IMG/VR virus record: IMGVR_UViG_3300009370_001221
Span: 1 to 64,000 of that record
Reading direction: 5' to 3' (one strand)
Length of the DNA stretch: 64,000 nucleotides
The translations under genes were made by a program, and so were the position numbers. This document shows, piece after piece, positions 15,791-21,296 of this stretch. Position 1 is the stretch's first letter. Every line of letters starts with the position of its first letter. The notes below the pieces were generated by a model. That model had not been told where the DNA came from. It did no database searches and was given only the letters and a program-made list of their open reading frames with translations.

Positions 15791-16243
15791 TTATGGTTGG
15801 TTTTGTGGTATGGGACCGAGATTAAAACTTTCGCAGTGGCCGACCGCTTCACAGTCTATTATGCTAATATCTGCTTTTAATTTAGCACGTTCTAGCATTT
15901 CATACCAATGTTCTTCACTTTGATAACCTGCCCAACGTACTAGTTCGCGTTTATTAACTTCATCCCATATAATAAACGTAGGAACAGCATATAATCTCTT
16001 TATATTGCCTTCCCAATAATGCTCTAAATATTCTTGATTTGCAATAATACCATTAGTGATGTCTATTTTTATCATTGGTAAATCAATATCATCATAAAAC
16101 TCTGGAATTTCGTCTATCCAACGAGCACAAACAGGGCACCAGTTAGCAGTAACTACTAACAATTCCAATGCTTGTGCGGGCATAGCCACTAATAATAGCA
16201 ATACAAATAGGAACTTTTTCATATCAATTTGATTTAACTTCAA
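15791..16243 (-). CDS. Exported thioredoxin-fold protein
   Basis: Signal peptide, WCPVC (CxxC) and VPTFII. Confidence 0.75.
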   Translation of the reverse strand: MKLNQIDMKKFLFVLLLLVAMPAQALELLVVTANWCPVCARWIDEIPEFYDDIDLPMIKIDITNGIIANQEYLEHYWEGNIKRLYAVPTFIIWDEVNKRELVRWAGYQSEEHWYEMLERAKLKADISIIDCEAVGHCESFNLGPIPQNQP

Positions 16244-17323: not shown

Positions 17324-17905
17324 TTGCTACCTAAATTGAATAACTTTTTCATTGACCCTGATATTTGCTTTGACGTGAGCAAATTACAGGATGCATTGCG
17401 CGAAGTTGATTCGCGAGTCGCAAGACAATCTCCTTTAGGCAAAAGAGACATCAATGCTATTTGTCTGACACAAATTCCCGGTGATCCAAACTCTATCACA
17501 GGTGGTAATGTAAGAGGATTATTTTGGACACGCCCAACAAGCAGTGGTGAAGAGGTCCAACGAGAAAATCCAATAGACGAATCCCAATATACTGAGTTTG
17601 TTAAACTATTTGAAGATACTTACTTCAAAGAAGTATACGATACACTTATTCCCAATTATAAATTAGGCAGAGTAAGATTGCTTTGGAAAATGCCACGCAC
17701 AACATTGAGTTGGCACAGGGATCCTGAACGCAGATTACACATACCTATCGTAACCAACCCAGGCGCACTAATGATTATTGATGATGAAGTAAAACATATG
17801 CCCGCAGATGGCAAAGTATGGATTACTGATAATACAAAATATCATAATGCGTTTAACGGAGGCGAGGAAGATCGCGTCCATTTAGTTGCTACAGTTATAG
17901 AATAA
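17324..17905 (+). CDS. Asp/Asn beta-hydroxylase-like oxygenase
   Basis: WHRD, RLHIPIVTN and HNAFNGGEEDRVHLV. Confidence 0.8.
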   Translation: MLPKLNNFFIDPDICFDVSKLQDALREVDSRVARQSPLGKRDINAICLTQIPGDPNSITGGNVRGLFWTRPTSSGEEVQRENPIDESQYTEFVKLFEDTYFKEVYDTLIPNYKLGRVRLLWKMPRTTLSWHRDPERRLHIPIVTNPGALMIIDDEVKHMPADGKVWITDNTKYHNAFNGGEEDRVHLVATVIE

Positions 17906-17936
17906 GGAAAGGCCCTAAACGGGCCCTTCCAAAAAA
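17906..17936. terminator. GC hairpin between the convergent oxygenase and tmRNA units
   Basis: GGAAAGGCCC-TAAAC-GGGCCCTTCC followed by A6. Confidence 0.55.
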
Positions 17937-18114
17937 GCAGATTGGGTAACAAGGTATGCTCTATACCCCGGAATACTGCCGTGATTAAGCGGCTAATGCG
18001 TATTCGTAATAATCGTCGTTTGCAATTATTTTAGTTTGCTGTTTTTTAACATGGAACTGCTCCCATGTGTCGTCCGTATATCGTCCTCACCCTGTCGAAG
18101 CCATGTCACCCCCG

Positions 18115-18258
18115 TCAAAAAAAGATTAAGTATACTATACCACCAATAATAATTATGTCGGCACAGATACTCCATGCGACATATATTTTAAACATATATT
18201 CTATAGCTTTCCTGAAAGGCCTTGGTAATGTTTTTATCTTGTTCCGGAGGAATCGCAT
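18115..18258 (-). CDS. 47-aa basic/transmembrane peptide inside the tmRNA intervening segment
   Basis: AGGAGG-8nt-ATG; MRFLRNKIKTLPRPFRKAIEYMFKIYVAWSICADIIIIGGIVYLIFF*; stop codon ends 1 nt before tmRNA G1. Confidence 0.65.
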   Translation of the reverse strand: MRFLRNKIKTLPRPFRKAIEYMFKIYVAWSICADIIIIGGIVYLIFF

Positions 18259-18292
18259 CGTCGCTTCCTCCTATCAATGTATTATAGTTCAT
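18188..18292 (-). CDS. Possible 34-aa ORF in the tmRNA intervening segment
   Basis: AAGGAGA RBS right after CCA; MNYNTLIGGSDDAIPPEQDKNITKAFQESYRIYV*; overlaps the 47-aa ORF out of frame. Confidence 0.35.
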   Translation of the reverse strand: MNYNTLIGGSDDAIPPEQDKNITKAFQESYRIYV

Positions 18293-18372
18293 TTTAATCT
18301 CCTTTTGGTGGAGGTGGTGGGGATCGAACCCACGTCCAGAATGCATATTGTCTACATCATACGACAATAAAG

Positions 18373-18546
18373 TTACTTACTTATTTTCTTTTCTTCATAT
18401 AAAACATGTTTGCGTACAACTGGGTCATACTTTTTTAATTTAAGTTTATTGCCACCCATCTTTCTTTTATTAACGGTTGTGGTATAATAATGCCCGGTAC
18501 CAGCAGTTGATACTAATTTAATAATTGTAATATTTTTACTTGCCAT
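18373..18546 (-). CDS. rpmG: 50S ribosomal protein bL33 (zinc-independent form)
   Basis: Hand translation: [57 protein letters not shown], with IKLVSxAGTGHxYTT and [10 protein letters not shown] signatures; TAATG overlap with the upstream gene; absent from ORF track (57 aa). Confidence 0.95.
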
Positions 18547-18890
18547 TACCATGCATCCTTAAATTGTGGTTTAGCGAAATTATCATTTTCTATAACATGT
18601 TCTTTTACTTCTTCTTTATCACCATAAGATATATTTTGCGGTGGCACATCTACAGAACTTCCTGTAGTATAAAATCTTGATGCTGTTTGTACATCATCAA
18701 AACTTTGTGATTTTTGTCCCATTGCTTTATCGAAAATGTCTTTATAGTCATTATAAATTTCCATATAGCTAGAAGGACCATATTTTTTCTCGGCCTCATC
18801 TGTGACAAACTTAACATACTCTGATGCTAAAGTCAAATCACCACCTGCTAATTTAAGACATTCTAATCTTATATGTGTTGAATCAATCAT
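18546..18890 (-). CDS. Hypothetical protein
   Basis: [10 protein letters not shown]-terminal motif; translationally coupled on both sides. Confidence 0.6.
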
Positions 18891-19083: not shown

Positions 19084-19386
19084 TTAATTATCTGCTTCTA
19101 TTTTTACTTGTAACGGGTAATTATTGTTACGAGATAGTACAGTGGTTTCAATACCTTTTTGTTCTGCTATTTCATACGGCAATACTGCTACTATAGCAAA
19201 CCCTTCTTGATGTATTTTATGTGTCAAATCTTGTGCGGCATCAATGGCATGCATAAAAATAGACATTAAACAATTTACAACAAAATCCATTGGTGTAACA
19301 TCATCATTAATAAAAACTACCTTATACAAAGGTGGTTCTTTTAACTTTAAATTTTCTTCTATTTTAGTTGCAGTATCTGACATCAT
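19084..19386 (-). CDS. clpS: ATP-dependent Clp protease adaptor ClpS
   Basis: PPLYKVVFINDDVTPMDFVV...IHQEG...YEIAEQK...YPLQ. Confidence 0.95.
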   Translation of the reverse strand: MMSDTATKIEENLKLKEPPLYKVVFINDDVTPMDFVVNCLMSIFMHAIDAAQDLTHKIHQEGFAIVAVLPYEIAEQKGIETTVLSRNNNYPLQVKIEADN

Positions 19387-20033: not shown

Positions 20034-20845
20034 AAGTGTAAAAATTCTTCTTTAATACCAGCAAAATTGCCAGCAGGATCAGGGGGCACTGGTGACTCAG
20101 GTGTTTGGTCTCCATGTGTACGTTCAATTAAATTTCCGTCAGGGCCTTCATGATATGTTGATTGCCACCTTTGGTCATATACAAATGGTGTCATATATGT
20201 ATTAACATCTGTTATATGATAAATCTTTTCTTCAGTTAGTTCTCCACCTTTTCGTTTAGTATATGTTTCTTCTACTACAGTAAAATTAAACGCTGTTTTT
20301 TCTTGCCCTGGTTTAACCAAATCAAATTTAATTAAACCTTTAGATTTATATGGATTAATTCTAATTAATTCCACTGTGACAGGTGCAGTTATTTCTTCTT
20401 GTGGTACATCTGCAGTAGAGCCTTGCCTATACGCATAATAATGAATATTAACAGTCCATTCGCCTGGAAGGAAACCACGTATTGTAACAATCTCTTGATT
20501 CATATCACTTGTTACATAACGACCATCTGCTAATTGAACAGTGTCATTACTAGTACCTAGATCATCTCGATCCAAATGCATCAGTCCTCTATCCCTGCCT
20601 CTAAAACTAACAATTTGTCCTAATGGATCTCTAACCCACATGTCAATATCTTTAGACGATCCTTCAGGCCAAGTTAATATGAGCAATATCTCTGCCTTTG
20701 GATCTATTTTTTTATCTGTGGGGACAGGAGGTGCTATAAGCAAGAATGCTATAACAAAAAGGAACACAAAACCGATTAAAGTATTAAACAATAAATCAGT
20801 AAATCCTAATCCTGATAGATATCTGTTACGCTTTCCTGTGGTCAT
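20021..20845 (-). CDS. MotB/ExbD-like TM helix plus periplasmic beta domain protein
   Basis: FTDLLFN TM helix with a conserved Asp; LTWP...DIDMWVRDP...LDRDDLG...NIHYY. Confidence 0.6.
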   Translation of the reverse strand: MTTGKRNRYLSGLGFTDLLFNTLIGFVFLFVIAFLLIAPPVPTDKKIDPKAEILLILTWPEGSSKDIDMWVRDPLGQIVSFRGRDRGLMHLDRDDLGTSNDTVQLADGRYVTSDMNQEIVTIRGFLPGEWTVNIHYYAYRQGSTADVPQEEITAPVTVELIRINPYKSKGLIKFDLVKPGQEKTAFNFTVVEETYTKRKGGELTEEKIYHITDVNTYMTPFVYDQRWQSTYHEGPDGNLIERTHGDQTPESPVPPDPAGNFAGIKEEFLHLWGY

Positions 20846-21296
20846 ATTCTAAGTTCATCAATTGTAATTTGGTAATAATTGAGCACACAAGGCCTACCAA
20901 TGTAGTTGTTAACGCGGTACTCATTCCCGCGGCCATATCTCGTATAACTTCCTTGGCTTGTCCTATATTAGTTAAATCTAAGTCAGCAAAAGCGCCACCT
21001 AGCATTATGATAAAACCTGTTACTGTACCAATTAACCCCAAAGTTATCATTGATTCAGCAAAGAACCATGATACTTCTATTGTGCGGAAATTTAAAGGTC
21101 GGCTTTTATAGAGTTTGTATGATTGATGTCCTAAATGGGCAGTTAAACCATAAAACAGTATTAATATACCAAAGCTTATCTTGGTTTGGTCTAAATGCCA
21201 GAGGGTGACCCACATATCGAAATAATGTACTACTGCCGTTGAGGCAAGTACAGCACATGTTATTAGCCACCACTTGAGAAAGCAATTTGATCGCAT
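20826..21296 (-). CDS. MotA/TolQ/ExbB proton channel family protein
   Basis: LGLIGTVTGFI...GMSTALTTTLVGL. Confidence 0.88.
   Translation of the reverse strand: MRSNCFLKWWLITCAVLASTAVVHYFDMWVTLWHLDQTKISFGILILFYGLTAHLGHQSYKLYKSRPLNFRTIEVSWFFAESMITLGLIGTVTGFIIMLGGAFADLDLTNIGQAKEVIRDMAAGMSTALTTTLVGLVCSIITKLQLMNLEYDHRKA

What the first reader, a model, noticed from the sequence alone, without database searches (positions are those of the whole stretch)
17930..18367. Phage-encoded circularly permuted two-piece tmRNA
Seen: the CCA-bearing acceptor piece lies upstream of the GGGGGTGA 5' piece, with G3.U70/A73 alanine identity and tag ANDDYYEYALAA. Established: permuted ssrA occurs in alphaproteobacteria, some betaproteobacteria and marine cyanobacteria, and the LAA C-terminus is the ClpXP degron. 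Inference: the phage supplies its own ribosome rescue and tagging RNA using host SmpB (no smpB in this window). It is also a host-range clue.
Basis: partly seen in the sequence, partly recalled or inferred. Interest (0 to 1): 0.7.

Follow-up and report, generated by a model that had tools for sequence, protein, structure and literature searches.

The report
Phage two-piece tmRNA hosting a gene
A large marine phage carries and transcribes its own split ribosome-rescue RNA (two-piece tmRNA), which is a known kind of thing, but the stretch cut out between the two pieces holds a conserved 47-residue membrane-protein gene, which I did not find described.

Summary
Rfam finds a full-length permuted tmRNA: RF04321 at 119.7 bits (cut-off 47) and RF01850 at 99.6 bits (cut-off 84). 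The acceptor piece is 18366..18306 and ends in CCA. The coding piece starts at G1 = 18113. G3.U70 and A73 are present, and the tag is ANDDYYEYALAA (18023..17985).

Three marine metatranscriptomes cover only 17966..18369. A DNA run covers all 5.9 kb around it evenly.

The record is a 235-kb fragment of a jumbo phage (35.8% GC, terminase present). No smpB was found in it.

Phage two-piece tmRNAs are already published (Melnitz, pelagimyophages), so the finding as written is a new member of a known kind. The host-range clue does not hold up.

It holds a 47-aa membrane-protein gene, 18258..18115, whose stop codon ends 1 nt before G1. That frame is under purifying selection (pN/pS 0.24-0.34). I found 31 distinct homologues in marine phage contigs: 13 inside tmRNA intervening sequences and 18 free-standing. 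Another phage tmRNA carries a 146-aa SNase gene at the same place.

bL33 and ClpS genes lie just upstream.

The parts
17903..18369 (-). Whole permuted tmRNA gene: acceptor piece, intervening sequence, coding piece and terminator
   Evidence: Rfam RF01850 18417..17903 and RF04321 18366..17985. RNA contigs cover 17966..18369 only.
18306..18366 (-). Acceptor piece: 5' strand of the inter-piece helix P2, T arm, 3' strand of the acceptor stem, A73 and CCA (18308..18306)
   Evidence: Rfam alignment. RNAalifold on 10 relatives shows compensatory changes in P2 and the T arm, and the U.G pair in 10 of 10. A poly(A)-tailed RNA contig of a 97%-identical relative ends at 18303-18306.
18114..18305 (-). Intervening sequence of 192 nt, removed from the mature two-piece RNA. 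Its ends form a 12-14 bp closing stem (18305..18294 with 18129..18118).
   Evidence: Relative L067 has only 9 nt here. Cellular beta-type genes have 3-44 nt.
18115..18258 (-). 47-aa membrane-protein gene nested in the intervening sequence. SD AGGAGG is at 18272..18267. The stop UGA is at 18117..18115, 1 nt before G1.
   Evidence: ORF list. pN/pS 0.24-0.34 in this frame against 0.8-2.8 in the other two frames for diverged pairs. Homologues.
17966..18113 (-). Coding piece as seen in RNA. G1 = 18113. The Rfam beta model extends it to the terminator at 17903.
   Evidence: X15 contig 17967..18113 has 0 mismatches at depth 20. X17 contig has depth 76 and ends at 18113.
17985..18023 (-). Tag reading frame ANDDYYEYALAA plus UAA; resume codon GCA at 18023..18021
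   Evidence: Rfam alignment. Relatives keep the frame through synonymous changes: L112 UUA to CUA; L067 reads ANDDYYDYAMAA. ARAGORN gives ANDDYYEYALAA for L121 and ANDSYYDYALAA for L123.
17906..17930 (-). Intrinsic-terminator-like hairpin closing the tmRNA gene, facing the convergent hydroxylase gene
   Evidence: last helix of the RF01850 alignment.
18373..18552 (-). Ribosomal protein bL33 gene. Its stop lies 6 nt upstream of the acceptor piece.
   Evidence: PF00471, E 1.7e-14. An RNA contig of a relative joins it to the acceptor piece. Synteny is kept in L121 and L112.
19084..19386 (-). ClpS (Clp protease adaptor) gene, same strand, about 0.7 kb upstream
   Evidence: PF02617, E 2.5e-24. Same order of genes in L121.

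Best explanation
The locus is a working, phage-borne, circularly permuted ssrA gene on the minus strand that doubles as the carrier of a small protein gene.

Steps of the model:
1. Transcription runs from the bL33 gene into the tmRNA gene.
2. The 3' strand of the acceptor stem (upstream piece) pairs with GGGGGUG of the downstream piece across a 192-nt intervening sequence whose own ends form a closing stem.
3. Host RNase P cuts 5' of G1 (18113), and host 3'-end maturation trims to CCA (18306). This gives a two-piece tmRNA held together by the acceptor stem and helix P2.
4. Host AlaRS charges it through G3.U70 and A73. Host SmpB delivers it to stalled ribosomes. The tag ANDDYYEYALAA sends the products to Clp-type proteases.
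5. The intervening sequence is not junk. It encodes a 47-aa protein with a basic N-terminus and a C-terminal membrane helix, carrying the invariant motif Y-x-AWSI-x-AD. The protein is made either from the precursor or from the excised stem-closed RNA.

Shown: the fold, the covariation, the tag frame, presence in RNA, purifying selection on the nested frame, and homologues both in this position and elsewhere.

Inferred: the processing enzymes, charging, use of host SmpB, translation of the nested gene, and what its protein does.
For: Fold:
- Covariance models accept it over their full length.
- RNAalifold on 10 related phage genes gives compensatory changes in 4 of 5 P2 pairs, in the T arm and in one acceptor-stem pair. 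The G.U pair is present in 10 of 10.

Tag frame: kept through synonymous changes in relatives.

RNA:
- Three metatranscriptomes cover 17966..18369 and nothing in the 2.6-2.8 kb on either side. DNA run X1 covers all 5.9 kb evenly at depth 4-5, with one perfect 1360-nt contig across the gene.
- Contigs end at G1. One poly(A)-tailed contig ends at the CCA. Contigs of the coding piece have higher depth (20, 76) than contigs of the intervening sequence (4, 6) in X15 and X17.

Nested gene:
- The same 47-codon frame is present in L112, whose tmRNA is 79% identical in DNA. Synonymous sites are near saturation there (0.78) while non-synonymous change is 0.22.
- A strong SD precedes it.
- 31 distinct homologues were found in IMG/VR contigs, 13 in tmRNA intervening sequences (beta-like and alpha-like) and 18 as ordinary genes.
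- A profile search finds 83 clusters (50% identity) among 1.84 billion representatives, nearly all under 120 aa.
- L117 carries a Pfam-supported SNase gene in the same position.

Phage identity.
Against: - No smpB was found in the record, and host SmpB compatibility is untested.
- The RNA evidence is from assembled contigs, not reads. Contigs break at sequence shared with other tmRNAs, so ends at G1 and at CCA are suggestive only.
- Some RNA contigs span both junctions, so precursor (or some DNA) is present too.
- There is no evidence of translation of the 47-aa frame.
- UGAU or UGAC just before G1 is common even in intervening sequences without an ORF. The position of the stop codon may therefore be an inherited motif rather than a design.
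- The protein has no known family.
Confidence: 0.8

Rival explanations
1. The tmRNA is real, but the 47-aa frame is not expressed as protein. The long intervening sequence is only a structured spacer, or the remnant of a gene that happened to land there.
For: The region is highly structured (MFE -64.4 kcal/mol, z -4.67). Its SD and AUG sit in a hairpin. The closing stem and the UGAN motif exist without ORFs in other phages. The close relative L067 does without it.
Against: pN/pS is 0.24-0.34 in this frame only, including between two copies that both sit inside tmRNA genes (WIN against L112). The frame length is kept. An SD is present. The Y-x-AWSI-x-AD motif is invariant across 29 aligned homologues, many of them ordinary genes.
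Confidence: 0.08
2. The locus is not a phage function. It is either host ssrA DNA carried at a prophage or attachment-site boundary, or a decoy that only titrates SmpB, like the TLD-only RNA of mycobacteriophage DS6A.
For: tmRNA genes are frequent integration sites, and many IMG/VR hits to the acceptor-arm pattern could be such boundaries. The DS6A precedent is in PMC4131195.
Against: The gene is complete, lies 18 kb inside a phage contig with phage genes on both sides, and has conserved phage synteny (ClpS-bL33-tmRNA) in other contigs. No species-representative genome holds its pseudoknot-region 26-mer. The tag frame is conserved through synonymous changes.
Confidence: 0.04
3. The nested gene is wired to trans-translation. 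After RNase P cleavage its mRNA ends 1 nt past the stop codon. Slight 3' trimming would then make it a non-stop message whose product is tagged and destroyed when tmRNA is active, and which accumulates when rescue is saturated. This is feedback of the kind known for ArfA.
For: The stop codon lies at -4..-2 from G1 in every nested copy seen. The gene is co-transcribed by construction with the tmRNA. The excised RNA would have both ends held in the closing stem. ArfA precedent: PMC10107115.
Against: The stop codon is retained in the predicted excised RNA, so it is not a non-stop message as such. The same UGAN motif occurs without ORFs. 18 of 31 homologues work as ordinary genes away from any tmRNA. 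There are no data on the ends of the excised RNA.
Confidence: 0.12

Closest known systems
Two-piece tmRNAs of marine phages: Methylophilales phage Melnitz, Pelagibacter phage Mosig, Melnitz-like and pelagimyophage contigs (Buchholz et al. 2022, PMC9004378)
   Same: A circularly permuted ssrA carried by a lytic marine phage, with no phage smpB reported, in an AT-rich genome. The published survey counts 53 two-piece tmRNAs among 18,146 phage genomes, 50 of them marine or aquatic.
   Different: This one is in a jumbo phage whose terminase is closest to the PA5oct and Atu_ph07 group (52% and 47%). It scores as beta-type rather than alpha-type and is linked to bL33 and ClpS. Its intervening sequence is coding. 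Mosig's own tmRNA is compact, 215 nt for 213 model positions. No glutamine riboswitch was found here.
Cellular beta-type two-piece tmRNA (Rfam RF01850; mainly Rhodocyclaceae)
   Same: The order of the pieces, the acceptor-arm sequence GCNUUCUGGACG..CCACCUCCACC, the CCUUGUUACC element in the 3' domain, and a score above the gathering score.
   Different: 99.6 bits against 222-285 bits for cellular members. Intervening sequence of 192 nt against 3-44 nt in 75 species. About 36% GC against 59-68%. No likeness outside the tRNA-like domain.
Oddities recorded in tmRNA intervening sequences and introns (tmRNA database 2025, PMC11915505)
   Same: That paper notes a tRNA-Ala gene inside one permuted tmRNA's intervening sequence, a repetitive element in another, and homing-endonuclease genes in group I introns of intron-form tmRNA genes. 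Passengers inside tmRNA genes therefore have precedent.
   Different: Here the passenger is a protein gene in the permutation gap, not in an intron. It recurs across many phage lineages and is fitted between CCA and G1. I found no report of this in the papers searched.
ArfA regulation by trans-translation in E. coli (PMC10107115)
   Same: A small protein whose message end is made by RNA processing, in a system tied to tmRNA.
   Different: The arfA message loses its stop codon. Here the stop codon is kept 1 nt inside the predicted cleavage site. The link to trans-translation is only a hypothesis.

Membership tests
Permuted (two-piece) tmRNA, Rfam RF04321 | Covariance model score above the curated gathering score over the full model | tested here: met
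   119.7 bits against 47, model positions 1-213 of 213
Permuted (two-piece) tmRNA, Rfam RF04321 | CCA-bearing acceptor piece upstream of the 5' piece, with a 7-bp acceptor stem formed between the pieces, G3.U70 and A73 | tested here: met
   Read. U.G present in 10 of 10 relatives, and one acceptor pair changes AU to GC on both sides.
Permuted (two-piece) tmRNA, Rfam RF04321 | Tag reading frame starting at an alanine resume codon and ending in a hydrophobic degron plus stop, conserved as coding | tested here: met
   ANDDYYEYALAA-UAA at 18023..17985. Synonymous changes in L112 and L067; variants ANDSYYDYALAA and ANDDYYDYAMAA.
Permuted (two-piece) tmRNA, Rfam RF04321 | Transcript cleaved into two stable pieces, with the intervening sequence removed | tested here: inconclusive
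   RNA contigs end at G1 (X15, X17). A poly(A)-tailed contig ends at CCA (X18). Coding-piece contigs have higher depth than contigs of the intervening sequence. But this is contig-level data, and contigs that span the junctions exist.
Permuted (two-piece) tmRNA, Rfam RF04321 | Works with SmpB | not testable with these tools
   PF01668 finds no match in the 235-kb record, which is 67% complete. The host is unknown.
beta_tmRNA, Rfam RF01850 | Score and architecture typical of the betaproteobacterial lineage | tested here: inconclusive
   99.6 bits passes the cut-off of 84, but cellular members score 222-285. The intervening sequence is 192 nt against 3-44 nt. Relatives that carry the same nested gene score as alpha_tmRNA.
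Intron-form tmRNA (group I intron in the T loop, sometimes with a homing-endonuclease gene) | Insert lies in the T loop and folds as a group I intron | tested here: not met
   The insert lies between the CCA end and G1, not in the T loop. The T arm is intact. No intron family is reported by Rfam in 17700..18700.
ArfA-like non-stop regulated rescue or sensor genes | The mature message lacks an in-frame stop codon | tested here: not met
   UGA at 18117..18115 lies upstream of the predicted RNase P site. This is a resemblance of logic only.
Known small-protein families (Pfam, PHROGs) | Significant profile match for the 47-aa protein | tested here: not met
   Best Pfam match is DUF2542, E 0.011, below its cut-off. 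Best PHROG E-value is 0.049. Atlas neighbours are unnamed.

The most novel reading that the evidence does not exclude
In marine phages the gap of a permuted tmRNA gene is a reusable expression slot. tRNA-type processing (RNase P at G1, 3' maturation at CCA) would punch out a stem-closed mini-mRNA whose stop codon sits at its extreme 3' end. Output of the passenger protein would then be tied to tmRNA synthesis and possibly to trans-translation activity. The passengers seen are a conserved 37-48 aa membrane protein, an SNase nuclease and others.
Probability: 0.2. Interest if true: 0.8.

Novelty: new variant of a known kind. Interest (0 to 1): 0.6.

Why it matters
The finding as written adds one more phage to a published list, with useful RNA-level support from metatranscriptomes.

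The nested gene is the part worth follow-up:
- It shows that the sequence discarded during two-piece tmRNA maturation can carry protein genes under selection.
- It offers a natural case of an mRNA defined by tRNA-like processing sites in a phage.
- It points to an uncharacterised, sharply conserved small membrane protein family (Y-x-AWSI-x-AD) that marine phages repeatedly keep next to or inside their ribosome-rescue RNA.
- It warns annotators: RNA-gene callers mask this ORF, and ARAGORN mis-assigns the tag because of the long insert.
- The ClpS-bL33-tmRNA cluster suggests a phage module that acts on translation and on the fate of tagged proteins.

Tried and rejected
- ARAGORN's second call, a standard tmRNA at 18306..18845 with a 33-aa tag, is rejected. 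It reuses the same T arm, its 'tag' is the C-terminus of the 114-aa ORF, and Rfam does not support it.
- The 34-aa ORF that starts right after CCA (MNYNTL...) is rejected. It is not conserved in L112, and its apparent SD (AAAGGAG) is the 5' strand of the closing stem.
- 'The stop 1 nt before G1 is a special design' is weakened, because UGAU or UGAC precedes G1 in many intervening sequences without an ORF.
- Host identification failed:
  - The 26-mer of the pseudoknot region has no hit in 185,579 species genomes.
  - The acceptor-arm pattern finds only high-GC genomes, mostly named Rhodocyclaceae, alike in the tRNA-like domain alone.
  - A scan of 151 genomes of that order gave 4 clear permuted tmRNAs (156-166 bits) and no names.
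- GenBank phages hold no match to the relative's tmRNA or to the peptide. The only DNA hit of the region is the neighbouring hydroxylase gene in phage Mosig.
- The search for related loci refuses a single 47-aa query, so an alignment was used instead.
- Pfam, PHROGs and the ESM Atlas give no function for the peptide.
- One paper (PMC516066) is not held.
- No structure or complex prediction was run, because none would have changed the conclusions.

Full report
**1. Observation**

ARAGORN reports a permuted tmRNA on the minus strand at 17751..18398, but with an implausible tag. Rfam is decisive:
- RF04321 (tmRNA_permuted) matches 18366..17985(-) at 119.7 bits (gathering score 47) over the whole model.
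- RF01850 (beta_tmRNA) matches 18417..17903(-) at 99.6 bits (gathering score 84).

Read from the sequence and the Rfam alignment:
- The upstream piece ends ...CACCUCCACCA, with CCA at 18308..18306.
- The downstream piece begins GGGGGUGA at 18113.
- The two form a 7-bp acceptor stem with G3.U70, followed by A73.
- The tag frame is 18023..17985, ANDDYYEYALAA then UAA.
- A terminator-like hairpin (17906..17930) closes the gene.

Only the strand was left unsaid.

**2. Independent support for the fold**

I aligned ten related phage genes found here. All carry a long intervening sequence, and some score as beta-type and some as alpha-type. RNAalifold recovers four helices:
- The inter-piece helix P2: 4 of 5 pairs changed on both sides.
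- The T arm: compensatory changes.
- The acceptor stem: U.G in 10 of 10, and one AU-to-GC exchange on both sides.
- A 12-pair stem closing the intervening sequence.

The tag frame is kept through synonymous changes. L112 has UUA changed to CUA. L067 has AAC to AAU, GCC to GCU and GCU to GCC, and reads ANDDYYDYAMAA. L123 reads ANDSYYDYALAA.

**3. It is in a phage**

- The window is the first 64 kb of a 235,363-bp IMG/VR record, CheckV 67% complete, with 35.8% GC and one tRNA.
- The record holds a large terminase at 74.8 kb. Its nearest cultured relatives are the PA5oct-like jumbo phages (52% identity), Sinorhizobium phage Phosso and Agrobacterium phage Atu_ph07.
- The window holds RNR, a DnaB-type helicase, another helicase and a structural-like protein.
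- The record has a ClpP-family gene at 215.9 kb and no ClpX/ClpA-type AAA_2 domain.
- No SmpB was found.

**4. It is present in RNA**

The locus is held by marine and seawater metagenomes and by several metatranscriptomes. I laid runs on 5.9 kb around the gene:
- DNA run X1 covers everything evenly at depth about 4-5. One perfect 1360-nt contig spans 17476..18835, so the long insert is real DNA.
- The three RNA runs X15, X16 and X17 cover 17966..18369 and nothing in the 2.6-2.8 kb on either side. This argues against DNA carry-over.

Details:
- An X15 contig (depth 20, no mismatch) and an X17 contig (depth 76) end at 18113, which is G1.
- Contigs of the intervening sequence have depth 4-6 in those runs.
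- Some contigs cross G1 (X16, 17966..18231) or the CCA end (X15, 18169..18369), so precursor is present as well.
- In a poly(A)-selected library (X18), a contig of a 97%-identical relative runs from the 114-aa ORF through bL33 and the acceptor piece. It stops at 18303-18306 followed by 18 non-templated A.
- That contig indicates co-transcription with bL33 and a 3' end at the CCA.

These are assembled contigs. Contigs break where sequence is shared with other tmRNAs, so the ends are suggestive, not proof.

**5. What is already known**

- Phage-borne two-piece tmRNAs are published. OM43 phage Melnitz and Pelagibacter phage Mosig carry them. Of 18,146 phage genomes, 402 had tmRNA; 53 of the 133 unique forms were two-piece, and 50 of those were marine or aquatic. 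17 of 47 Melnitz-like contigs had one (PMC9004378).
- Huge phages carry tmRNA and sometimes SmpB (PMC7162821).
- The 2025 tmRNA database lists 79 phage sequences (PMC11915505).
- Viral bL33 is also known (PMC6375957).

So the finding as framed is a new member of a known kind.

**6. Host clue**

- The RNA only just passes the beta model. Cellular beta-type tmRNAs score 222-285 bits.
- The 26-mer of its pseudoknot region is absent from all species-representative genomes.
- Its acceptor-arm signature occurs in 78 species. Most are named Rhodocyclaceae genera. All 19 loci printed have 59-68% GC, and they resemble the phage RNA only in the tRNA-like domain.
- With the Melnitz precedent of a phage ssrA type that does not match its host, the type of tmRNA does not identify the host here.

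**7.

Between CCA and G1 lie 192 nt. That compares with 3-44 nt in 75 cellular beta-type genes and 9 nt in L067, a phage relative whose tmRNA is 86-89% identical in the aligned pieces.

It holds a 47-codon frame, 18258..18115:
- SD AGGAGG lies 8 nt upstream of the AUG.
- The product has a basic N-terminus and a hydrophobic C-terminal helix.
- The UGA stop ends 1 nt before G1.

L112, whose tmRNA is 79% identical in DNA, has a frame of the same length with many third-position changes.

Nei-Gojobori counts give pN/pS of 0.29 (window-L112), 0.31 (window-L132) and 0.24 (L112-L132). Synonymous differences are 0.6-0.85 per site. The other two frames give 0.8-2.8.

Breadth of the family:
- A protein search finds 47-aa and 39-aa relatives.
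- Their contigs show the same ClpS-53aa-115aa-bL33-tmRNA order (L121), or a T4-like setting with lysozyme, gp59, transcription coactivator and ThyX (L124-L127). In that setting an alpha-type permuted tmRNA carries the homologous ORF in its gap.
- A degenerate-pattern scan of IMG/VR gives 41 loci and 31 distinct proteins.
- Of those proteins, 13 sit inside a tmRNA gap with the stop 0-1 nt before G1, and 18 are free-standing genes.
- Near-identical proteins occur in both settings: L133/L134, L135/L136 and L158-L160/L152. In L136 the gene sits just upstream of the tmRNA promoter.
- In L132 it is an ordinary gene between an Fe-S assembly gene and mazG, downstream of clpP.
- The motif Y-x-AWSI-x-AD is invariant in 29 aligned members.
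- A profile search of 1.84 billion representatives finds 83 clusters, nearly all under 120 aa.
- No Pfam, PHROG or Atlas name applies.

**8. Other passengers**

In the ORF-blind sample of 120 IMG/VR loci fetched with the acceptor-arm pattern, about 40 distinct intervening sequences are 60 nt or longer. Six of them are almost filled by an ORF that ends 1 nt before G1:
- L114: 26 aa.
- L100: 24 aa (weak; shuffle P about 0.06).
- L052/L072: 41 aa.
- L022: 54 aa.
- L112: 47 aa.
- L117: 146 aa.

The L117 ORF is a staphylococcal-nuclease homologue (PF00565, E 2e-11). It starts 12 nt after CCA and ends 1 nt before G1, in a T4-like phage context. Cultured phage Mosig has a compact gene without such an insert.

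**9. Anatomy of the insert**

- The first 12 nt after CCA (AAAGGAGAUUAA) pair with UUAAUCUUUUUU just before UGAC|G1. The last codons of the protein (L-I-F-F-stop) lie in this stem.
- The stem recurs, with G.U, A-U and G-C exchanges, in nearly all long phage intervening sequences, with or without an ORF.
- The 221-nt region folds far better than shuffles (-64.4 kcal/mol, z -4.67).
- The SD of the 47-aa gene pairs with codons 3-5, with the AUG in the loop. A start-codon hairpin made of different sequences recurs in about half of the family.
- The 34-aa ORF that starts right after CCA is not conserved, and its 'SD' is a strand of the closing stem, so I reject it.
- UGAU or UGAC before G1 is common without ORFs. 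The stop position may therefore be an inherited motif that passenger genes use.

**10. Mechanism**

Most likely this is an ordinary two-piece tmRNA: RNase P at G1, 3' maturation at CCA, Ala charging via G3.U70, host SmpB, and tagging with a YALAA-ending degron.

In addition, a passenger gene is expressed from the same transcript, either from the precursor or from the excised stem-closed RNA. What the small membrane protein does is unknown. Its sharp motif, with an aspartate inside the membrane helix, suggests a specific membrane partner.

The neighbouring ClpS is known in E. coli to steer ClpAP away from ssrA-tagged substrates (my own knowledge, not tested here). Together with bL33, it suggests a phage module acting on translation and on the fate of tagged proteins.

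A feedback link between the passenger and trans-translation, like that of ArfA, is possible but unsupported. The stop codon is retained, and most homologues work away from tmRNA.

**11. Verdict**

- The nested, selected protein gene in the permutation gap, recurring across marine phages, is the new element. I found no report of it in five literature searches.

Noticed in passing
window 18373-18552 (-): Phage-encoded ribosomal protein bL33 (PF00471), with its stop 6 nt before the tmRNA. An RNA contig of a relative joins the two, and the linkage is kept in L121 and L112.
   Followed up: partly
window 19084-19386 (-): Phage ClpS adaptor (PF02617), upstream on the same strand and in the same gene order as L121. 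The record also has a ClpP-family gene at 215.9 kb, but no ClpX/ClpA-type domain was found.
   Followed up: partly
window 18306-18845 (-): ARAGORN's second call, a standard tmRNA with a 33-aa tag, is a false positive built on the same T arm. ARAGORN also picks the wrong tag for the true gene, probably because of the 192-nt insert.
   Followed up: yes
window 17998 and 18113: In RNA run X17 a contig of depth 76 joins 17998 (inside the tag frame) back to 18113 (G1), reported as 'goes back 116'. It could be template switching at a true 5' end, a circular or ligated RNA, or an assembly loop. Unexplained.
   Followed up: no
L117:1581-2021 (-): A 146-aa staphylococcal-nuclease homologue fills the 454-nt gap of another phage's permuted tmRNA (tag ANDDYFALAA).
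   Followed up: partly
L135:2807-3015 and L136:1813-1987: A manA RNA motif (RF01745) lies directly downstream of the phage tmRNA in two contigs.
   Followed up: no
window 18245-18275 (-), and homologues: The SD of the 47-aa gene is paired with codons 3-5, with the AUG in the loop. Equivalent hairpins made of different sequences occur in about half of the family, which hints at translational control.
   Followed up: partly
window 17324-17905 (+): A convergent aspartyl/asparaginyl beta-hydroxylase-like gene (PF05118). It is the only stretch of the region with a DNA match to a cultured phage (Pelagibacter phage Mosig, 72% over 108 nt).
   Followed up: no
window 20826-21296 (-) and 15791-16243 (-): A MotA/ExbB-family membrane protein and a thioredoxin-like protein lie among the neighbours. 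Several small membrane proteins (53 aa, 216 aa) lie between ClpS and bL33.
   Followed up: no
L022, L052/L072, L114, L100 (intervening sequences): Further unrelated ORFs of 24-54 aa fill the tmRNA gap and end 1 nt before G1. There is no comparative evidence yet that they are coding.
   Followed up: partly
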